Assembly: GCA_000320545.1 (NCBI GenBank) | Contig: ADNK01000196.1 | Coordinates: 1 to 44,718, forward strand | Length of the DNA: 44,718 nt | Direction: 5' to 3' | Origin: Bigelowiella natans CCMP2755 | Taxonomy: Eukaryota; Protista; Cercozoa | Shown: in pieces, positions 4,730 through 44,718 of the stretch | Layout: each line of letters begins with the position of its first letter | Numbering within the stretch: position 1 is the stretch's first letter | Notes under the pieces: generated by a model | The model's input: only the letters and a program-made list of their open reading frames with translations | What the model was told of the DNA's origin: nothing | Databases searched by the model: none | Program-made: the position numbers and the translations under genes

Positions 4730-6249
4730 ATGAGCGGACGGCCTGTCCCTCCTTTAAAAACAGGAGTGATTCTTGATACTGAAGGGAAGGTGTTGCCGTC
4801 TCCAGACGCTGCAAACATTCTCATGTCTTTAAAGTTCCCTTCAAACAAAAATGGGAAGAAAGCTAACAGCAACGGTGTAAAAAAGGAGGGGGGGATCTTA
4901 GTTGATCAACAAAAAAACAAGGTAAAAATATTTCGGCGTCTTTAATTAATCAGTACTTAGCGTAGTTTTTCGTGGGCAGTATATTTTAAAGAAAATAATG
5001 ATATCAAATGCCTGTCTTGTAAATACTTGATCGACAGGTCATTAAACCGCCTGTCCCACGGCAAGTGTGCTCTCGTATAAAGGGGATTTCAAAGGAATCG
5101 TTCCAGAGAGAGGAACAACGATTGCAAGTATTATCTGACAAGGAACGAAATAGTGGGAAAATGAGAAAGCCTGCTCAACAGGATGGCAAGGCTCGAGTGA
5201 GAGATTACAATGCATCAAATGGAGGATTGGTGCATCCAATCCAGCAACAGCAACAGCAACAGCAACAACAACAGCAACAGCAAACAGGCCTGCGTGAGAA
5301 GCAATTTTACAACACTCCTCCTACCCAGACGCAATTTGCTGTTGATAGTTCTGAACCCCTATTTAAGAGAAGATTGCAGCCCCACTACTCCAGCAATAGT
5401 AGTGGTCAAAATAATCAACAAATATCTCCACCTGTACCCCCGCCGCCACCTCCAACAGGAAGTTCTGCCAGCAACGAGCAAGATCATAGTGTTGCAGCCC
5501 CAGTTCCAATGCCGGTTGGTTATTATCGTCAACCCAGCTTGGCCCAGTCGACGATCCCAAGTGCGCAGTATACTGCTAGTATGAAGCAACAGCAGCAGCA
5601 GAATTGCCCATCATCATTATCTCATAGACAGCGAGGAGTAGGTGCTATCACTACCAAAAGTAATAGCAGCTTTGGCTCCTCAAAATCCCCTGAGGGCATC
5701 CTCATAAGAGATGATCAATCGCGCCAACTCTTAAGCATACCGGAGCAGTCTCCACCTGAACGGCCCCACTCAGCTCCGAGTAGCGACCAGCTGCGAGTCA
5801 TGGAGTTAAATGCTTTTATGGAGTACAAGCAACAAGAAGGGGAACGTCAAATGAAGGGTAGTAGTAGCCAATATCAGCAGCAACAGCAGCAGCAATATTA
5901 TCAGGCGCAGCCGCAGACAATAGCCCAACAATATACGACCTCCTCCCATGGTGGACAAGGATTAATTAGGTCAAGGTCCCCCCCTGCTGCTTCTATCATA
6001 GGCACAGATGCTGCTGCCAACCCCTTTAAGAACTATTTAACGCCGACAATACCCACTGCTGGTGCTTCTAACTACCCTTACGGTAGTCTCGCAGCAGCAG
6101 CAGCAGCAAGCAGTCATCAGATGGGCCAGAGAATGACGACTATGCCGAGTGGGAGTGGTGGTCCAAATCAAATCTACGAAGCAGCTAGTGGTGTCAGTGG
6201 CCACTCTGCTGCTAATACTACCGCTGCTGCTGTAATGATGCCACAGATG

Positions 6250-6287
<38 letters not shown>

Positions 6288-7519
6288 TGGGCAGCGGCGT
6301 CTGCAGCAACAGAACGATTGGCAGCAAGCACCACCACCTCCAAAGAGAGCTAGAATCATGACGATGAACCAACAGTTTACTGCTTCTGTTGCTACTTCAA
6401 GAGGTGGACAGAAACGTAGAGGTGGTGGCACAAAAAAAGGACCACGTGAGGCCAAAGCCCAGATTTGCAACCAATGCGGAAAAACTTTCAGCACGGGTGG
6501 CAACCTTTCGAGGCATATGCTTACCCATAGTGACGAGCGCCCCTTCTCTTGTGGAATTTGCTTCAAAAGTTTCCGCCAGCGCGTGCACCTCAAGAAACAC
6601 ATTCGCTTGCACACAGGAGAGAAGCCTTATTCCTGCCCCCATTGTAATAATTACAATAAGAATAATAATAATTATATGTTGCCGTGTAAATGTCATCGTC
6701 GTCATCATTATTATCCTCATCCTCCTCCACCATATAAGTGCACGTACTTATCCTTCTATTTGTGGTATGTGTATTATATTTTTAGGTCCGAAGAGCTTCA
6801 CGCAAAAATCAACACTCACGGGACATATCCGAACAAAGCACACCGGGGAAACGCCTTACCACTGCCCTGATTGTGACAGAAGATTCCCGACACGGAATCA
6901 CCTACGAGCGCACAAAAATAAATGTCAGCCAGCACAGAATAATCGTGGAACAACTACTGCCACCAGGAGCGCCACCGGGATTCTCCGCCATCATTCTGCA
7001 ACCAATCCCTCTTCTACAACTTCTTCAACCACTGCTGCTGCTGCTGCTGCTGCTGTTACTTCTACTGCCCAAACAGATCGAAACGGCACTTTTCCAACGA
7101 CAATAATTCAAGCATCACCTACCGCAGCTAACCCTTCACCTGCACCCCCTGCTACCTCAAGAATATCATCATCGACTGGACGCCAACAAGCTGCCGCTGC
7201 TACTACTACAATTCCCATGAACAACAACATAACTACTGGTATGATGTACACCCATACTACAAATGGAAACTATCATCATCAGCATCAGCAGCAGCAACAA
7301 CATATTCAGCCGCCCAGCTATACCACAGTAGCAGCTATAAATGGGGGAGTTAGAAGAGGAGGTCCAACCATTGTCACAACTGTTTCTCAGCAGCAGCAGC
7401 AGCAGCAGATTCAGCAACCACTACTACCCTCATCATCGTCATCCTCTCTACAACTTCCACCACCACCTCCTCCTCCTCCTCCTCCTCCTCCTCCACCAGC
7501 TGCTTCTGCTGCGCTGTAG
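4730..7519 (+). CDS. C2H2 zinc-finger transcription factor (4 Kruppel-type fingers) with Q/A/P-rich low-complexity regions; 3 exons
   Basis: Exons 4730-4921, 5038-6643 and 6786-7519 splice in frame. Fingers: [64 protein letters not shown] and [21 protein letters not shown], with (S/T)(D/G)E(R/K/T)P(F/Y) linkers. Confidence 0.9.
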
Positions 7520-9214: not shown

Positions 9215-11284
9215 TTAATCGATGTCCTGAGTCCGAGGCATGTCATTCGCACTACTACCCCCTCCAAAAGGGTTGCCTCCTCCTCCTCCTCCTCCTCCTC
9301 CTCCTCCTCCTCCTCCTCCACCACCACCACCAAATGGCATTCCCCCTGGCATTCCCCCTGGCATTCCCCCTGGCATTCCCCCTGGCATTCCCCCTGGCAT
9401 TCCCCCTCTACCTCTTCCTGCCTTTGCTTGCATTTTCGCCATCAAATTTATAATTTCAGGATCTGTTAAAAATTTCAAGTTCATACCTCCAAAGTAATAC
9501 AATGCAAGTGAAAAGTATTAACCATGAGTAATCTCACACTTGATTATTAATCCATTCTCCTAGTTCTCATCTTCACCACCACCACCACCAAGGCAGAAGC
9601 ACCATCGACTTTTTAGTCACCTGTTGGCATCTTTCCCTTTTGCATGTCCATCATTGCCTGTTGTAACTTTGCTAACGTAGCTGGATTTTGCATAGCTTGC
9701 ATCAGTTCGGGGTCCTGCATAAGCTGCTGTGCCATCCCATCCATACCCCCCCCACCCCCTGGCATTCCCCCTCCTCCTCCTGGCATTCCTCCTGGCATTC
9801 CCCCTCCATAACCTCCTCCTGGCATTCCCCCTCCATAACCTCCTCCTGGCATTCCTCCTCCATAACCTCCTCCACCGCTCCCATAGTCTCCACCACTTTC
9901 AAATATCTTTCGCTTCCGTTCTTCATGTTCTTTTTGTCTTTTTTTCTTCTCCCATTTCTTCACTTTCGCCATGTGTGCTTCATTCGCTGAGTCTCTCTCT
10001 TGTTCGTAGCGTTTTCTGTGATCTTCAACTTTCTTGTTACGCCAAACGCGTGCTCTAGCATATTTCTCATCTTCACCAGTAATCGGGTCATAATCAATTC
10101 TCTGCCCATTTAACAGGTACTGAATTGCACCTGTGTAATTTCCCAACATATTGTATGCTTTGCCAATAACCTTGAATGCCTTTGCGTTGTCCTCCGATAT
10201 CTTGAACGCCTTCTTCGCAACTAAAATGGCGGAGTTTGGACGTTTTTGATCAAGGAGCACTCTAGCGATCTCTGCCAACACAGAAGCCGTAGGGTATTGC
10301 CTCGCAGATTCACGATATTTCTCAATCGCTTCATCAAGCTTACCATCTTTATAAAGTGTCTTAGCTTCTTGTTTTAGATTATTTCCTGCTTGCATCCGAT
10401 CATCATTGAGATTGGTTGGTACTATTTCAGGAAGATCTTCAAATTCTCCAATTCGTACTTTATCTGGATTCTTCATAGCGTCTGGATCTTCTTCAATTTC
10501 AATGGGAACATAGTCGGGGTATATAAATTCTCCAGGATCCTCCATTATTACCTGTCATTTAAGGTAATATTTCCATGGTTTTATTATCTTTTACCAATAA
10601 TATTAATGCCATTAGGTTAGAGGAGAGAAATGGATATATTAGATGGAAACAGGCCAAAAATAGCACACGAATATAAACCACTACCGAAAAGCAAAGACAT
10701 TTTCCAAAATTGCTGCTACTACTGGTACTACTACCATTACCACAAGCACTATCACTGCTCCTACTTACCTACCTCTTCACCATCATGGCCTCCTACATTG
10801 GCTACCACTAGCACTACTACCACTGCTCCTACCTACCTACCTACCTACCTACCTCTTCACTATCATCGCTTACATTGATGAACAGACCCTAACCCGTGTA
10901 ACCCTACTACCTCTTCACCATCATGGCCTACATTGGCGAACTGGTGTCCTGTTCCATCGTCGAAAATTTGTTTCTTTTCCCCCACTTTCTCCTATAGATG
11001 ATGATGAAGATGATGATGATGATTATGATGATGATGATGATGACAAACGCAGATAATGGTGATAGAAAGAAGTGTATAATAATAATAACCCAAGCAGCTT
11101 CTATAACCTTGTTGTCGTCCTCAGAGCGTAGGGTAGGTGCCATATGGGTTATAAATAGTTTGAAGAACTTAAACTCTGGTTTTTGAAGGAGGGATGGATC
11201 TCTTTGCACTTCAAGACAGCAATGCTCGAGGATCTTTATTTGTTCTGGCGTTATACTACTACTACCCCCACCTTCTCCTTCCAT
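9215..11284 (-). CDS. ST13: Hsc70-interacting protein Hip: HipN dimerisation domain, TPR, GGMP repeats, STI1/DP domain; 4 exons
   Basis: Exons 11284-11108, 10991-10911, 10551-9621 and 9462-9215 join in frame. Motifs: QRDPSLLQKPEFKFFKLFI (HipN), TPR ...QKRPNSAI...GQRIDYD, GGMP repeats, and LMQDPELMQAMQNP...DPEIINLMAKM (STI1). Confidence 0.92.
9336..9407 (-). repeat. Coding 12-bp tandem repeat (GGMP)x6; a second block of 27-bp units (GGGYGGGMP) lies at ~9760-9875
   Basis: ggcattccccct repeated in tandem on the plus strand. Confidence 0.9.
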
Positions 11285-12998
11285 TGCATCTCCTCCCCTT
11301 AACCGAGACGTTAAGAGAAGAAAAGGTGCAGCCTTCGCTCTGTTCCCGGCAAGGAGAAATCTAGTGTCATCACAACAACTACTCCTACTACTACTACTAC
11401 TACTCCTGCAGTGTTGGCGTAGTCCATCATCTAGAATCCCAACAGTAGTGGTAGTGGTAGTAGTAGTTGCACATGCTCCGACTTTATGATGATGATCAGT
11501 GCTGTTGCTGCTAATATTCATAGTGCCATAATGTAGTAATTATTAGGGTTAAACTACCAACAGAACAATGTTTCATCATGAGTTGTTGTTGCAGGGTATG
11601 TAGTAGACGACATACATCATTTAAACAACACCTACTACTTCGCATACTAGCCAAAGAGGAGCTCATCATATTTTAACAAACCCACCTCGATAGGCAGCAG
11701 AACACAACCGCACAGGCGATAGTTACTACAATTGTGATCTTCCCCAGGACTGAGGATTTGGTTTTCTGGTAATAAGCTTTATCGTAGAGGAATTTTCTCG
11801 ATTTCGGAATGTGAACGTCATTATCCCGAAAGCCAGCATTAATTTTTTCATAAGTTGTGGGTATCATTGTTATAAATTTCCAAAATGCCAACCTATTTTT
11901 AATTATTTAAATCAGCCACTGATTTCCGTTTTCTCCGACTCCTCGTTCTACGCCCCCAACTAATCCGTAAGTATCATTCAACTACCTTTACGTACTGGAT
12001 CCAAACAATGCGATTATCAAGCTCTGTAATTTGCCTGAATTTTTTCTCTGCGTCGACCAATGTCCTCGTTGTTGCAGTTCACCTCGTGTCTCCTATTGTT
12101 CTGCTTCCCTCTCTCTCTCTCCTGCTCCTTACAGACGACGTTGATAATTCGCAAGTTGCTCACGCACCGAGTCCGCCGCCTCTTCTTCGAGAGTTGTGTT
12201 AATTAAACTTTTCTGACGCATGGCAGATAATATCATATATTTCCCAAGTACGACATCAAGGATGTGCAAAATATTGCTAGAAAGGGCTCTTCGAAAGATC
12301 GGAGAGAGAATTATGAAGAAAAAGTGGTCCTCCTGGTTGTTCCGAGCACAAATTTTGATGTCGCAATGTCATTATTGGGGGAGTAGATTTCACAGATTTC
12401 ACAGCTTCTCTAACATATTTATTTGGTGGATCCAGCCCTGGATATTTTAATTTATTCCAAATATTCGTATGTCGTAGGCATAGAATACCGAACCCGGTAT
12501 TCAATTAAAGCCAAAAAACAATTTCTTTTCTTTTCTCACTGATTTCGTTTGGAAAATGAGCTAGATTCGCTGTTGGCCCCGGGGAATCCGAGAATGTATG
12601 GGGATCCCTACTTTACCGGTTGTGCGACAACGAGAAAGAACCGTGCGAACCGGAGGTCAAATTTAGGAGAATTTTGCTTAAATGTTGCTTTTTCGTGGAA
12701 ATCAGGGAACAGCCCTCATCAATGCCAGGCGGCCCTTTTAAAAAAAAATGGTCACATTTCCCTTGTGCGTCATGTTCCATTAGCATCTATCACGAAAGAT
12801 GGGATCAAATTTGGGATTGTTGGAGTTGTGAAGTGCCGGCCTATAAGTCTTAATCTAGCTTGCACCTAGCTGGAATCCCCTCCCCAATAATCGCATATAT
12901 CTCTTAGCTGCCTGATGAAGAAATACATGTTAATGGGGAGGAGATGATAATTGTCCGACGAGCTCGTAGTACTGTACAAGAAAAAGTACGGTGAAGGA

Positions 12999-40657: not shown

Positions 40658-42200
40658 GTATCTCTCCTTCTCTCATACACCTCCCTAGGAAAAAAACAGA
40701 CACGCACATGATCTTTCGCTTTTTTCAGGCAATCAAGAAGCATGGCCAGATTTTCATGGGGAAAAGAATAACGTAAGGGACACTACCAATACATTATTTA
40801 TCAAGAGACTTCAATCTATTCGATATATTCGTTTAATTATATTGTGCATTTTCTTAGTTGCCTTCGTACGTAATATATATTTATTTATTTATTTATTATC
40901 CAGGAAAAATACAATATAACGTCCATACATACAAAAGTATATATAAAAATAATATTTATCGTCTAAGTAACTCAATAATAAGGAATCTGATACCTTTAGT
41001 TGTGAGTACTCTCGTCCCCTGAAGGAAAGTGGTGCTGCATCAACTAAACAAATAGGAAAAACGGGAGAACAGTCAAGGTTCTAGTAAACCATCTTTTACT
41101 GGTGACTAACATTAAAATAATATTTTCCAATTATTCCAAGGTTTTCTTCTAAAAACGAGCAACTTCCAAAGACGCGCGTTTTTATATCAAATCTCGACTA
41201 CAACATCGATGAGACTGCGGTCAGTATATTATTACTACTGTGAATAATATCACGGCAAATCTTTGCTATTTCAATTATTTGATGGTATCAACTCTATATC
41301 AATTTACTGGCTATTGAAATTTAAATTGGTGTGCATAAGACAAAGTATGACCATGAGACAACAATGTCCGGATATGGAAACACTAATCTTTCATGAGATC
41401 ATCTTTCAGATACAGATGGCATGATTCATGTGGGAATGCATGGCTCCATCATTAAAGACTCCATCGATTTTAATTTATCCCTATGTATGTCCTCTGATAA
41501 ACTTTGTAATTAATCATACACATTAACACTGATAAAGGTTCGGGAATTCTTCTCTGATTGCGGTGACGTTCGCAACATTAAATGGTCCGAAAAAAACGGA
41601 GAATTCTTCTGTAAGGTAATTAAGAACAGTGTGGGCATAACTTAACATTAATGGTCATAAACTTTACGATTGTACTAGAATCAATTCTCATCAGATTCCA
41701 TACTAAAACTTATGTGTCAATTATGCTCAAATTTATTTGTCATAATAATTCGTGAACTAGGGTGTTGTAGAATTCGAATCCGCAGATGCTGCTCAAAAGG
41801 TATAGTAATTACAAAAACTTGAGCACGTACATACCATGGAGTATCTGCGCAAATTAATATTTTGTACTACAATTTGCAGGCCGTAAAGAAATCTGGAGAA
41901 TTACTCCTGGGAAAAGAACTGAAAGCAGAGATATCCAATCCGCCTCGGTCATGAATAATTTGATACAATATGATTGAAGCAATCTCATCCTTGTCCCGCA
42001 TCTTATCCACTAGAAACTCAATTACATTTATTTAACTTTAAACAGGAAACGTATGACTGATAATACGGTGTCATAAGGAATACACGAACACACACACACG
42101 CGCGCGCGCGCGCACGTATTACACATTCATCAAGACAAATTAAGAATGAGAGTAAGAGAGAGGAGGCGGAGAAAGATAGATGGGGAAAGAGAGAGAGAGG

Positions 42201-42234
<34 letters not shown>

Positions 42235-42418
42235 TAACGTAAGAGTAACACTACTATTGCGAAATGTTACATGAAAAAAGGATGAGATGAATCCTTGGAG
42301 ATATTTGATTTATTTTCGTTTATGTCAATGTATTCAGAATCTTTCTACGCATTTAGTCCCTCTCTCTCTCTCTCTCTCTCTAGTCACCTCTTCCTCTCTC
42401 TCTCCCTCCCCCCCCCCC

Positions 42419-42460
<42 letters not shown>

Positions 42461-43512
42461 CGCATGATTGTGTGGATTGTATCTGTTTTTCAACCTGGGA
42501 AACCTAGATTTTTCTAGGGAATCTGCCTTTCGATGTATCTGAGCAAGAGGTTAGTGTGTCAGTATTTTAAAAAGTTTAATGGTCTTTGTTATTAAATGAG
42601 ATTTCACCAAATTTCGAGACTAAGAGAAACAGGATTTCCTGCGTATAGTGGAAGGTTTGGTTTTTTGGGGGATGGTATTCATAAATTGCAGAGGCTAGCT
42701 TGGTGCTCTAGGGTTCCTTGACAAAACAGCAACCAAACAGAAAAACTTGAGGCCTTACCTGTCACATCATCCAAAAATTTACATCTGTATACAATTTTTT
42801 AGATTTTAATGGTGTTTATTTAGGTTCGCGACTACGCAGAGGATGGATCATCTAGCATTAAAGGCGTTCGCCTCGTGAGGGACCGTACAACACAGAGATT
42901 TAAAGTCAGATCATTTCCTCCCTTTAATGTCCGATATGTAGATTATTACTACAAAAAATGCTCGTATGTGTGTGTGCAAAGGGTAATTCTAAATGTTTGC
43001 GTTTGAGTATCATTCTTTAGGTCGTATTTTGTTTGTGAATTCGGATGTATGATGTATTTTTATACTTAATATCATCACAATTCATTGTTTAGGGTTATGC
43101 ATTTATCGAATTCGACGACCAAATAATGGCGAAAAAGTAGACATATTTCTTTTTGTTTTGATTTAACGATTTACGATATACATTACTTGTTTTTTTAAAA
43201 CACCATCTGCAATACAAAAAATATGCATTGTTATAGTGTAAATAAATAAATAGGGCTACAGAAAAAAGTGATGATGCATCTAGAAAGTTATAGAAGCAAT
43301 CAACATTTTGATTTAGGTTCAAGTATATTAGAGCTAGAGGAGGGAAGACAAGACATGTTGTCACATTATCCTTGGAATTAGTCTAAGTTCTTTCTTTGCT
43401 GATGCCGTTGTTCAACAGATTCGTGAAATCAAAGTTCGGGACTCAATTGCGCGGGAGGCCTGTGCGTGTTCGGGAAATGTTAGAAACAAGAGGGAGGCCA
43501 CCAAGTGGCTAG
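32254..43512 (+). CDS. Large multi-exon RNA-binding protein: K/S/D-rich N-terminus, ZZ-type zinc finger, SH3b-like domain, 4 RRMs (nucleolin-like); start uncertain
   Basis: ZZ: CDG|CGNRKIQPGSKLYT|CEKCDYDLCYNC. RRM RNP2/RNP1 pairs: VYLLNL...GRGWVRF, IYVRNL...GSGFVQF, VFISNL...KGVVEF, IFLGNL...KGYAFIEF. Stop TAG at 43510-43512. Exons before ~34900 are low-complexity and uncertain. Confidence 0.8.
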
Positions 43513-44094
43513 TTAGTTATTTAATCTTTTTCGAAAGACAATCACCCTAATTAATAACATCGGGTCAGGTTTTCCCCGGTACACATTGAGTAGCTAAATA
43601 ATGTCTGCATTCCAAGTGAGAACGCTTGCATGCACTTTGTGATGTCAAGATTGCCAAAGGCTAGGCAGAGTACTTGTCAAAAAAAACGAGCACAGATACA
43701 GGTCGTCAGTATGCATAACATGACAAATAAAACTAGAATGTTTATTACCTTTCGTACGTGACGCGCATGCACCACAGTTCGGTTGATCGTTATCGATCAT
43801 TGAAAAAGCGATTCAAAATCGTATGCGTACACGTGCACACATTTGTATGAGCTAAAAGCCGCGAGTAAGCATTAAGATCTTTGTCACAACAACAATTTTT
43901 TCACACCCACCCCGCGTGCGTTGTAGCTGTAACAAGATGCGATACAAGCATGCACACTTTATCATCAGCAGCAGCTCTTTGATCCAATCATGCATGCTTC
44001 GTGCATGAACGTGTGCACCAAAATGCAAGAGAACCTGAAAACATGGTCACACGGTGCAATGTGTAGGTAATGCGATTCAATGATGACTTAAGTG

Positions 44095-44452
44095 TGTCAG
44101 CGGTCTGGCCGCGCCACCCACGATCAAGGAGCTGTCGCAGCATGCGCACGTCCACTCGTGCTGCACGCTGCGCTGCGCACATGCGCATGGAAGTTCTCAG
44201 AACTTCCAGAATCTTCGAGAACATTCCGGAAGCTTCGAGAACCTTCCAGAAACACTCGAGAGAATTCGAGAGAATTCTGGAAGATTCGAGAATCTTCGCG
44301 AATGCGCCGGAACCCAATGCGCACATGCGTGCAGCGCAAGTCACAAGTCATCATCAGAATCCAAAAGCACACGAGACCGCGTGTTGACTTTCCAACATCA
44401 ACAGCACAGTCCCGCGCACAAAAGCCAAACAGCTACCGCTAGTCCGCTAAAA
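44095..44452 (+). repeat. Putative 5' LTR (358 bp)
   Basis: Starts TGTCAGCGGTCTGGC and ends GCTAGTCCGCTAAAA (11/15 inverted match), abutting the PBS. It ends in AA rather than canonical CA. Predicted TSD half AAGTG (44090-44094). Confidence 0.7.
44189..44313. promoter_or_regulatory. Heat-shock element (HSF-binding) array
   Basis: 10 consecutive perfectly alternating nTTCn/nGAAn pentamers at 44203-44252 and 6 more at 44274-44303. Additional GAA cores at 44190, 44200 and 44310. Confidence 0.88.
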
Positions 44453-44463
44453 GGTTATGAGCC
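44453..44463 (+). promoter_or_regulatory. Primer-binding site complementary to the anticodon arm of initiator tRNA-Met (half-molecule priming)
   Basis: GGTTATGAGCC is the reverse complement of GGCTCATAACC in the tRNA-iMet anticodon stem-loop, the PBS type used by Ty5 and copia. Confidence 0.8.
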
Positions 44464-44638
44464 TCAAGAGGACTTGCTAGAGAACCAACAAAGAAAAGAA
44501 CCAAGCAAACCCCCCACCCCCCCCCTTCAGCTACATCCTTCCAGAAGAAGGAACTGAAAGCGACAACAGCATTCCCTCAGCCAATCTTCGGTCAAGCCTC
44601 CAAAGCACTGAAAACAAAGAAACAGGGAACGAAACAAC

Positions 44639-44718
44639 ATGTCAGAAAAGCAGATAGACTCCCTGCTGAAAAACTTCACCCTCAAGTACGATGGTAGCAC
44701 TACAGCCCTACATGTACA
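44639..44718 (+). CDS. Putative gag N-terminus (3'-partial)
   Basis: MSEKQIDSLLKNFTLKYDGSTTALHV..., open to the window end, ~175 nt after the PBS. KYDGS resembles the (K)FDG motif near gag N-termini. Confidence 0.5.
   Translation, partial: MSEKQIDSLLKNFTLKYDGSTTALHV

What the first reader, a model, noticed from the sequence alone, without database searches (positions are those of the whole stretch)
44095..44718. Candidate heat-shock-activated copia retrotransposon with an unusually large HSE array in its LTR
Seen: a 358-bp segment bounded by an imperfect inverted repeat, directly followed by a tRNA-iMet half-molecule PBS and a gag-like ORF. It contains 10 + 6 perfectly phased nGAAn/nTTCn pentamers, with a 10-bp period over ~120 bp. 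Established: three pentamers bind one HSF trimer, longer arrays bind cooperatively, and Arabidopsis ONSEN uses LTR HSEs for heat-induced transposition. Inference: an independent, ONSEN-like hijacking of the host heat-shock response in a probable protist, with room for about five HSF trimers. It could also spread heat-inducible promoters next to host genes.
Basis: partly seen in the sequence, partly recalled or inferred. Interest (0 to 1): 0.9.

Follow-up and report, generated by a model that had tools for sequence, protein, structure and literature searches.

The report
Copia jumping gene with giant heat-switch array
The window ends inside a young, multi-copy copia-type jumping gene of a marine alga whose end repeat carries an unusually long row of perfect binding motifs for the heat-shock transcription factor, a likely independent case of a transposon tapping the host stress response, although induction by heat has not been tested.

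Summary
Window 44095-44452 is the 358-bp 5' LTR of a Ty1/copia retrotransposon. Intact copies are about 7.1 kb, with a 1480-aa gag-PR-IN-RT frame and 5-bp target duplications.

- **Primer site:** it pairs perfectly over 15 nt with the anticodon arm of the host's own initiator tRNA-Met.
- **This copy's other end:** its 3' LTR, followed by the predicted duplication AAGTG, lies on the neighbouring contig and is the only such site in the genome.
- **HSE array:** the LTR holds runs of 10 and 6 perfectly phased nGAAn/nTTCn units, about 23 GAA/TTC cores in 125 bp. All 12 canonical three-unit HSEs in the 44.7-kb window lie here, against 0.77 expected.
- **Variation:** sister subfamilies carry arrays of up to about 33 units that differ by 10-bp steps. 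Cores are conserved while spacers vary (p = 3e-9).
- **Host side:** two HSF genes have an intact recognition helix, and HSE-like motifs are enriched upstream of HSP genes.
- **Expression:** sense RNA is present in one confirmed RNA run, and contigs of three further runs show spliced antisense RNA. No heat-shock data could be examined, so heat induction remains an inference.

It is not the ONSEN lineage but a convergent case. This scan had already reported the same family on other contigs (s1-733855, s1-417311).

The parts
44090..44094 (+). 5-bp target-site duplication AAGTG, left copy
   Evidence: The LTR end followed by AAGTG occurs exactly once in the 91-Mb genome, at G000:C3540:2663-2681, next to an LTR at C3540:2319-2676. 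Ten of 15 full copies have exact 5-bp TSDs and one more differs by a single base.
44095..44452 (+). 5' LTR, 358 bp. Its termini (44095-44106 and 44441-44452) form an imperfect inverted repeat that begins TG and ends AA, not CA
   Evidence: It is 100% identical to both LTRs of several 7.1-kb copies. At least 40 matching places exist in the genome.
44154..44188 (.). Left G+C-rich arm of an inverted repeat that brackets the array, with CATGCGCA-type motifs
   Evidence: the repeat finder pairs I6, I8 and I9. The 196-nt region folds at -51.5 kcal/mol, z = -6.8. The arm is identical in all subfamilies.
44189..44253 (.). HSE block 1: 13 GAA/TTC units. The last 10 (44203-44252) are contiguous, canonical nTTCn/nGAAn pentamers
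44260..44304 (.). HSE block 2: 6 contiguous canonical pentamers (44274-44303), preceded by GAG-type degenerate units. It is 1 bp out of register with block 1
44317..44341 (.). Right arm of the bracketing inverted repeat. A CCAAT sequence ends just before it, at 44314-44318
44370..44372 (+). Candidate RNA 5' ends (tentative)
   Evidence: About 1,300 sense reads of RNA run X22 start aligning at L031:776 or 778, preceded by about 9 unmatched letters. Two guessed junction sequences are absent from the genome. This is not a demonstrated start site.
44452..44466 (+). Primer-binding site: 15 nt perfectly complementary to the anticodon stem-loop of the host tRNA-iMet. Its first A is also the last base of the LTR
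   Evidence: The tRNA-Met(CAT) genes L048:1476-1547 and L050:1476-1547 have A1:U72 and a GATCGAAAC T-loop. The PBS is conserved in 22 element copies.
44639..44718 (+). Start of the gag-pol ORF, cut by the contig end
   Evidence: In other copies it is a 1480-aa frame with Retrotran_gag_2, Pol_BBD, rve, SH3_retrovirus and RVT_2 domains. In the window two one-base differences lie inside it.

Best explanation
**What it is.** Window 44095-44718 is the 5' end (LTR, primer-binding site, leader and first 26 codons) of a young, probably still active Ty1/copia LTR retrotransposon. Earlier notes of this scan name the host as the chlorarachniophyte alga Bigelowiella natans; I did not verify that name. The rest of this copy lies on the neighbouring contig.

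**How it replicates (inferred).** Reverse transcription is primed by a 5' fragment of the host initiator tRNA-Met, as in Drosophila copia.

**How it is likely regulated (inferred).** The middle of the LTR is a 125-bp array of alternating nGAAn/nTTCn units with runs of 10 and 6 perfect units, and up to about 33 units in a sister subfamily. The most likely function is cooperative binding of several trimers of the host heat-shock factor. That would make the LTR a stress- and heat-responsive enhancer-promoter for the genomic RNA, and possibly for flanking DNA.

**Shown here:** the element's anatomy, copy number and youth; the match to the HSE consensus far above chance; conservation of cores against variable spacers; host HSF genes and HSE-like motifs at host HSP genes; sense transcription of the LTR.

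**Inferred:** HSF binding, induction by heat, and the position of the array upstream of the start site.
For: **Element anatomy**
- Paired identical LTRs lie 7.1 kb apart.
- The 1480-aa frame has copia domain order.
- 5-bp TSDs are exact in 10 of 15 copies, and LTR pairs differ by 0-5 of 358 positions.
- This copy's own 3' LTR plus AAGTG was found at C3540.
- The 15-nt PBS matches the host tRNA-iMet.

**The array**
- 12 of 12 canonical HSE hits in the window fall in the array, against 0.77 expected.
- Genome-wide there are 254 six-unit hits against 0 for the reversed control.
- Array length differs among subfamilies only in 10-bp steps: LTRs of 356, 358, 368, 398 and 416-418 bp. The first 108 bp of the LTR are identical in all of them.
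- One insertion with an intact TSD has a 398-bp 5' LTR and a 418-bp 3' LTR.
- In the 15 in-phase decamers of the long array, 3 of 90 core positions deviate against 25 of 60 spacer positions (Fisher p = 3e-9).

**The host**
- Two HSF DNA-binding-domain genes are present, scoring 97.7 and 54.8 bits.
- The C1696 protein keeps the SFVRNLNMYGF recognition helix, followed by a stretch that looks like a coiled coil by eye.
- Near-HSEs (at least 8 of 9 core bases) form 16 clusters in seven HSP70/90/20 upstream regions. Shuffles give 4.3 +/- 2.1, and the window background gives about 2.

**Transcription**
- Stranded RNA run X22 gives sense depth of about 2100 over L031:601-800, against 30 antisense.

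**Precedent**
- ONSEN has five HSE-like units in 49 bp (PMC13602373).
- Macrostomum lignano LTR elements have 1-4 HSEs, are induced more than 250-fold by heat, and lose heat responsiveness when the HSEs are mutated (PMC12801592).
Against: - No heat-shock or HSF-binding data were examined.
- RNA of the element is already present in the four runs laid, from four studies. Their culture conditions are unknown, so expression may not need heat.
- Sense reads cover the array itself at high depth. The array is therefore transcribed, as U3 of 3' LTRs or because the start lies upstream of it. The candidate 5' ends at 44370-44372 are tentative.
- None of seven host HSP upstream regions has a single perfect three-unit HSE. 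The host factor's preferred site may therefore differ from the textbook consensus.
- The array with its G+C-rich flanks is a long imperfect palindrome, which could have a structural role instead.
- The two perfect runs are 1 bp out of register.
Confidence: 0.6

Rival explanations
1. The array does bind an HSF-family factor, but the output is not heat-specific. It could be a strong constitutive enhancer, or one that responds to another stress (oxidative, nutrient or light), or a sink that titrates HSF.
For: Element RNA is present in all four runs laid, from four studies. None is known to be a heat experiment, because run identities are coded. In some protist lineages HSF families serve roles beyond heat (my own knowledge, not tested here).
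Against: HSE-like motifs are enriched upstream of classical HSP70/90/20 genes. That links this motif class to the chaperone regulon, which responds to heat in all studied eukaryotes.
Confidence: 0.2
2. The array matters as a nucleic-acid structure rather than as a protein-binding site. It would be a long hairpin or cruciform in U3 DNA or RNA, for example a source or target of small RNAs, or a by-product of template switching during reverse transcription.
For: The 196-nt region folds at -51.5 kcal/mol with z = -6.8. G+C-rich inverted repeats that are not HSEs bracket the array and are conserved in all subfamilies. Short reads (60 nt or less) pile up on the LTR at 10-100 times the depth of the body. 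Array length changes in 10- to 20-bp steps, even between the two LTRs of one insertion.
Against: A hairpin needs only complementarity, so any covarying pair would serve. Instead the GAA/TTC cores are held fixed while the spacers vary. An HSE array is self-complementary by construction. Reads are almost all from one strand, unlike typical siRNA from double-stranded RNA.
Confidence: 0.1
3. The array is a neutral 10-bp minisatellite that expanded by slippage inside the LTR and resembles the HSE consensus by accident.
For: Copy number is variable and higher-order 20- to 40-bp repeat units are visible.
Against: Core positions are about 12 times less variable than spacers. The array is retained in every subfamily examined, including ones about 12% diverged in the 3' third of the LTR. 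It matches the exact HSF consensus, including inverted orientation and 5-bp phase.
Confidence: 0.05
4. It is an ordinary host heat-shock gene promoter and not a transposon.
For: None was found.
Against: The ORF continues as a copia gag-pol frame. There are paired LTRs, TSDs and a PBS, and at least 40 LTR places in the genome.
Confidence: 0.01

Closest known systems
ONSEN (ATCOPIA78), the heat-activated Ty1/copia element of Arabidopsis and other Brassicaceae
   Same: Both are Ty1/copia elements with clustered nGAAn/nTTCn units in the LTR. Both have young, near-identical copies.
   Different: ONSEN has five HSE-like units in 49 bp (PMC13602373). This element has 16 perfect units and about 23 in all, and a sister subfamily has about 33. 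The polyprotein is only about 28-30% identical to plant copia proteins, so the lineage is different and the acquisition convergent. Heat induction and HSFA binding are demonstrated for ONSEN and untested here. The PBS here is the internal half-tRNA type; plant copia elements use the 3' end of tRNA-iMet (my own knowledge).
HSE-bearing Ty3 LTR retrotransposons of the flatworm Macrostomum lignano (PMC12801592)
   Same: Both show independent capture of canonical HSEs in LTR promoters. The same regular-expression definition of an HSE applies to both.
   Different: Those elements are Ty3/Mdg4 with 1-4 HSE motifs per LTR, and their HSE dependence is validated experimentally. Here the same definition gives 12 overlapping motifs in a copia element of an alga, with no validation.
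Helitron1_CE of Caenorhabditis (PMC6927752)
   Same: A mobile element that carries HSEs and spreads them through the genome, so it can rewire the heat-shock regulon.
   Different: It is a rolling-circle DNA transposon, not an LTR element, and HSF-1 dependence is shown. Here spread to host genes is suggested only by read-through reads from one 3' LTR into its flank.
SmTCL heat-activated Ty1-copia elements of Symbiodinium microadriaticum (PMC5776459)
   Same: A copia family of a marine protist with recent expansion, linked to heat.
   Different: There the heat induction is measured but the paper describes no cis element; the terms HSE and promoter do not occur in its text. Here the cis element is obvious but induction is unmeasured.
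Drosophila copia
   Same: The PBS is complementary to an internal stretch of tRNA-iMet around the anticodon arm, which implies a cleaved half-tRNA primer (my own knowledge for Drosophila copia; tested here for this element).
   Different: The host and lineage differ, and copia's LTR has no canonical HSE array. PMC12801592 notes that the HSE-like sites proposed in Drosophila are far from the consensus.

Membership tests
Ty1/copia (Pseudoviridae-type) LTR retrotransposon | Two direct long terminal repeats flanking an internal region | tested here: met
   LTRs of 358 bp lie 7.1 kb apart in at least 8 copies, with 0-5 mismatches per pair. This copy's 3' LTR is at C3540:2319-2676.
Ty1/copia (Pseudoviridae-type) LTR retrotransposon | Domain order gag - protease - integrase - reverse transcriptase | tested here: met
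   Pfam matches along the protein: Retrotran_gag_2 at 104-227, Pol_BBD at 374-457, rve at 608-703, SH3_retrovirus at 765-825, RVT_2 at 958-1208. No separate RNase H model was tested.
Ty1/copia (Pseudoviridae-type) LTR retrotransposon | 5-bp target-site duplication | tested here: met
   Exact in 10 of 15 full copies, with 1 mismatch in one more. AAGTG flanks both ends of this copy. Four copies lack a TSD and share 3' flanks in pairs, which suggests recombination or assembly chimeras.
Ty1/copia (Pseudoviridae-type) LTR retrotransposon | PBS complementary to a host tRNA directly after the 5' LTR | tested here: met
   15 of 15 nt are complementary to the anticodon arm of the host tRNA-iMet genes L048 and L050.
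Ty1/copia (Pseudoviridae-type) LTR retrotransposon | Polypurine tract directly before the 3' LTR | tested here: inconclusive
   Only a short G-run (ATGGGGGCG) precedes the 3' LTR. It is identical in all copies.
Ty1/copia (Pseudoviridae-type) LTR retrotransposon | LTR termini TG...CA | tested here: not met
   The LTR starts TG but ends AA (...CCGCTAAAA) in all copies. The terminal inverted repeat is imperfect, 9 of 12. This is a common but not universal feature, so it does not exclude membership.
HSE-driven, heat-activated LTR retrotransposons (functional class: ONSEN, Macrostomum lignano elements) | Canonical HSE (three or more alternating nGAAn units) in the LTR | tested here: met
   12 overlapping canonical motifs, in runs of 10 and 6 perfect units.
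HSE-driven, heat-activated LTR retrotransposons (functional class: ONSEN, Macrostomum lignano elements) | HSEs lie upstream of the transcription start, in U3 | tested here: inconclusive
   Candidate RNA 5' ends lie 58-70 bp downstream of the array. However, sense reads also cover the array at high depth, and only 200-bp bins were available.
HSE-driven, heat-activated LTR retrotransposons (functional class: ONSEN, Macrostomum lignano elements) | Transcript level rises on heat shock | not tested
HSE-driven, heat-activated LTR retrotransposons (functional class: ONSEN, Macrostomum lignano elements) | Host HSF binds the LTR | not testable with these tools
   Only the prerequisites were shown: HSF genes with a conserved recognition helix and HSE-like motifs at host HSP genes.
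ONSEN / Oryco lineage of plant copia elements (phylogenetic membership) | Close polyprotein relationship to plant Oryco-clade elements | tested here: not met
   Best hits are 38-48% identical and come from unnamed Logan or ENA contigs. Plant copia proteins are 27-30% identical. No tree was built.

The most novel reading that the evidence does not exclude
The family carries the strongest HSF target sites in the genome: none of seven host HSP upstream regions has even one perfect HSE, while each LTR has 12-30 overlapping ones. Array length would be tuned under selection in 10-bp steps. Because an HSE array is symmetric, the same array could drive sense genomic RNA from the 5' LTR and the multi-intron antisense RNA seen across the element from the 3' LTR. 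Dozens of copies could act together as an HSF sink that alters the host's own heat-shock response. This would be a super-enhancer form of HSE hijacking in a eukaryotic supergroup (Rhizaria) where I found no description of it.
Probability: 0.15. Interest if true: 0.8.

Novelty: new variant of a known kind. Interest (0 to 1): 0.6.

Why it matters
Capture of heat-shock elements by LTR retrotransposons has been validated experimentally only in Brassicaceae (ONSEN) and one flatworm (PMC12801592).

A third, clearly independent case would show that hijacking the HSF regulon is a recurrent strategy across eukaryotes. This one sits in a rhizarian alga and has an array several times longer than any described in the papers I read.

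The family also offers a natural series of array lengths (356- to 418-bp LTRs on otherwise 96%-identical elements). That series could be used to study how the number of HSF sites sets promoter strength.

In a warming ocean, a heat-triggered mutagen in a marine phototroph is also of ecological interest.

All of this depends on a heat-induction test that has not been done.

Tried and rejected
- **Host HSP promoter reading:** rejected.
- **Full 20-nt post-LTR sequence as a tRNA probe:** it found only element copies and no tRNA. The textbook initiator anticodon-stem pattern GGGCYCATAACCC is absent from the genome. A 17-nt anticodon-arm probe then found the real tRNA-iMet genes.
- **Perfect three-unit HSEs upstream of host HSP genes:** none in seven regions. 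Only near-matches are enriched.
- **HSE arrays in the closest relatives:** the contigs of P0001, P0002 and P0017 show none, but they appear to lack LTRs, so this is uninformative.
- **Post-pol ORFs of the 7.1-kb subfamily (137 and 325 aa):** no Pfam family and no Atlas hit with low recognition. The 325-aa frame is truncated or replaced in sister subfamilies, so it is probably not a gene.
- **Loose read ends at L031:776/778 as an LTR deletion variant:** two guessed junctions are absent from the genome. The guesses came from low-agreement consensus letters, so this is weak evidence.
- **Organism name:** not verified independently. It comes from earlier notes of this scan.

Full report
**1. What is at the coordinates**

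The window is contig C3541 of a 91.4-Mb assembly in 3,736 contigs, and it ends inside the feature. Earlier notes of this scan name the organism as the chlorarachniophyte alga Bigelowiella natans. I could not verify the name.

Window 44095-44452 is a 358-bp repeat. At least 40 places in the genome match it, many at 99-100% identity. In complete copies two identical 358-bp repeats lie 7.1 kb apart.

Between the repeats is an uninterrupted 1480-aa frame. Its Pfam matches run in Ty1/copia order: Retrotran_gag_2, Pol_BBD (protease region), rve (integrase), SH3_retrovirus and RVT_2. The feature is therefore the 5' LTR of a copia element and not a host promoter.

**2. Ends, duplications and age**

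I cut out 15 full copies.
- Ten have exact 5-bp target duplications and one has a single mismatch.
- LTR pairs differ by 0-5 of 358 positions, and 8 of the 15 pairs are identical.
- 13 of the 15 keep a frame of 1455-1481 aa. One copy has a 1540-aa frame and one is split into two frames (439 and 906 aa).
- Four copies lack a duplication and share their 3' flank in pairs. This points to recombination between copies or to assembly chimeras.

The LTR begins TG but ends AA, and its terminal inverted repeat is imperfect (9 of 12).

The LTR end joined to AAGTG occurs exactly once in the genome, at C3540:2663-2681, next to an LTR at C3540:2319-2676. This copy is therefore a complete insertion that the assembly split over two neighbouring contigs.

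The last ~100 bases of the window differ from all other copies by three homopolymer-length differences, two of them inside the ORF. I cannot tell contig-end errors from real changes.

**3. Primer-binding site**

The 15 nt at 44452-44466 are perfectly complementary to part of a host tRNA-Met(CAT) gene. The matching stretch covers the 5' strand of the anticodon stem, the loop, and the first three bases of the 3' strand. Two copies of the gene were found, L048:1476-1547 and L050:1476-1547.

That tRNA has features I know as initiator hallmarks: A1:U72 and a GATCGAAAC T-loop. Its anticodon stem has two rather than three G:C pairs next to the loop.

The primer must therefore be a 5' fragment of tRNA-iMet, as described for Drosophila copia (my own knowledge). 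The same PBS is kept in 22 copies, and a one-base variant in others.

**4. The array**

GAA and TTC cores alternate at exactly 5 bp in two runs:
- 44204 to 44249, ten pentamers (44203-44252);
- 44275 to 44300, six pentamers (44274-44303).

Further units have 4/6-bp spacing or GAG cores, giving 23 cores between 44190 and 44312.

The three-unit consensus hits 12 times in the 44.7-kb window, all of them here. Shuffles give 0.77. The six-unit pattern hits 254 times genome-wide and its reversed control 0 times. The listed hits lie almost all in this family.

The two perfect runs are 1 bp out of register, because this subfamily has an 11-bp piece where a sister subfamily continues in phase.

**5. 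Family comparison**

LTRs of 356, 358, 368, 398 and 416-418 bp exist. Their first 108 bp are identical, and their last ~110 bp differ by roughly 12% between the 358-bp and 416-bp forms. Almost all of the length difference is 10- or 20-bp steps inside the array.

The 416-bp form has about 33 units in one unbroken phase. One insertion with an intact duplication has a 398-bp 5' LTR and a 418-bp 3' LTR. The array therefore changes length on the time scale of single insertions.

Across the 15 in-phase decamers of the long array, 3 of 90 core positions deviate from GAA/TTC. By contrast, 25 of 60 spacer positions deviate from their majority base (Fisher p = 3e-9). This pattern fits selection on protein-contacted cores and does not fit a drifting minisatellite. 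One caveat is that higher-order 20- to 40-bp repeats mean the decamers are not fully independent.

**6. The host side**

The genome has two genes with an HSF DNA-binding domain, scoring 97.7 and 54.8 bits. The C1696 product (289 aa) keeps the recognition helix SFVRNLNMYGF, followed by a stretch that looks like a coiled coil by eye.

I examined upstream regions of four HSP70, one HSP90 and two HSP20 genes.
- None contains a perfect three-unit HSE.
- Near-matches with at least 8 of 9 core bases form 16 clusters. Dinucleotide shuffles give 4.3 +/- 2.1 (maximum 12 in 200), and an equal length of window background gives about 2.
- Two HSP70 paralogues share one such site.

The HSF-HSE regulon therefore appears to exist in this organism, and the element's sites match the consensus better than the host's own.

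**7. Transcription**

One raw RNA run (X22) and the contigs of three other runs were laid on L031:401-6400.

The few X22 reads that cross introns with CT..AC ends (GT..AG on the minus strand) all have their first mate on the minus strand. In this library the first mate therefore reads the RNA strand, and the dominant signal is sense to the element.

| L031 region | Sense depth in X22 |
|---|---|
| 601-800 | about 2100 (30 antisense) |
| 801-1000 | about 700 |
| 1001-1200 | 152 |
| most of pol | under 10 |
| 5201-5400 | 437 |

The 801-1000 figure can be explained largely by the LTR part of that bin.

LTR RNA thus far exceeds body RNA. The available 200-bp bins cannot separate 3'-end bias, solo-LTR transcripts, read-through and short RNAs.

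About 1,300 reads begin aligning at L031:776 or 778 (window 44370-44372) after about 9 unmatched letters. Two guessed junctions are not in the genome. These may be RNA 5' ends carrying library letters, which would put the start 58-70 bp downstream of the array. This is tentative.

Another 198 reads run from the LTR end into the flank of the C3735 copy, so at least one 3' LTR is read through into neighbouring DNA.

Run identities are coded, so I do not know whether any condition involved heat. The papers I searched describe no heat experiment in this alga.

**8. Mechanism and rivals**

The best-supported reading is that the array is a cooperative binding platform for several HSF trimers. That would make the LTR a stress-inducible promoter, as in ONSEN and the Macrostomum lignano elements (PMC13602373, PMC12801592). 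I give this 0.6.

The main rival keeps HSF binding but not heat specificity (0.2), because the element is expressed in the runs examined.

A structural role has some support (0.1). The array and its conserved G+C-rich flanking inverted repeats form a 190-bp imperfect palindrome, and short reads pile up on it. The core-versus-spacer pattern argues against structure alone.

A neutral minisatellite (0.05) and a host promoter (0.01) are poorly supported.

**9. Comparison and novelty**

The element works like ONSEN but is not a member of that lineage. Plant copia proteins are about 28-30% identical, and the nearest relatives (38-48%) are unnamed contigs.

Published HSE-bearing LTR elements have five units (ONSEN) or 1-4 motifs (Macrostomum lignano). 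The heat-activated copia of Symbiodinium has no described cis element. I found no paper on this family.

This scan had already reported the same family on other contigs (s1-733855 and s1-417311), also with heat untested.

- the tRNA-iMet match;
- the recovery of this copy's 3' LTR and duplication;
- the core-versus-spacer test;
- the host HSP-promoter control;
- strand-resolved RNA evidence.

I class it as a new variant of a known kind.

Noticed in passing
L031:1281-6332 (equivalent to the interior of the element; outside the window): Contigs of three runs (X1, X3, X7), and a few reads of the confirmed RNA run X22, show at least 14 joints with CT..AC ends (GT..AG on the minus strand), 54-253 nt long, all along gag-pol. 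This indicates a multi-intron spliced antisense transcript of the element, whose origin and role are unknown.
   Followed up: partly
L057 element position about 5688 (G000:C394), and also L058-L062, C142:7494-7521 and C392:2921-2948: The 6.5-kb subfamily with the 416-bp LTR has a second, internal HSE-type array (three to five GTTCCAGAAT-type decamers) about 420 bp upstream of its 3' LTR. It lies in a region that replaces about 1 kb of the 7.1-kb subfamily.
   Followed up: partly
L058 (G000:C2046:59921-66422): One insertion with an intact AGGGG duplication has a 398-bp 5' LTR and a 418-bp 3' LTR. They differ by two decamers of the array, so the array changed length during or after that insertion.
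   Followed up: yes
G000:C273:59315-59342: A six-unit perfect HSE run whose sequence does not match this family. It may be a host promoter or another element.
   Followed up: no
L031/L032 and L053/L054 (3' flanks): Two pairs of full copies on different contigs share the same 3' flank but have different 5' flanks and no target duplication. The cause could be recombination between copies, insertion into another repeat, or assembly chimeras.
   Followed up: no
L031:5201-5400: A local sense-depth peak (437, against under 10 in neighbouring pol bins) in RNA run X22, near the end of pol, with a cluster of read ends at 5443. It is unexplained.
   Followed up: no
window 9613-11521 (-): ORFs with TPR repeats and a weak match to the Hsp70-interacting protein (Hip) N-terminal domain (22.6 bits, just under the 23-bit cut-off) suggest a co-chaperone gene about 33 kb from the element. 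The pairing is probably coincidental.
   Followed up: no
window 5065-7519 (+): Two overlapping ORFs in different frames with C2H2 zinc fingers. This is probably one host gene with introns.
   Followed up: no
window 42018-42517: Long CT/GA-type dinucleotide runs that give SLSLSL and RERERE pseudo-ORFs on both strands. This is a simple repeat.
   Followed up: no
window 44141-44189 and 44317-44329: A CATGCGCA/TGCGCACATGCG motif occurs several times on both sides of the array and is conserved in all subfamilies. GCATGC-type strings are also frequent in the 600 bp upstream of the LTR. It may be a second transcription-factor site.
   Followed up: no
window 44620-44718: Three homopolymer-length differences from all other copies in the last 100 bases of the contig, two of them inside the gag ORF. 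These are either contig-end sequencing errors or real frameshifts in this copy.
   Followed up: partly
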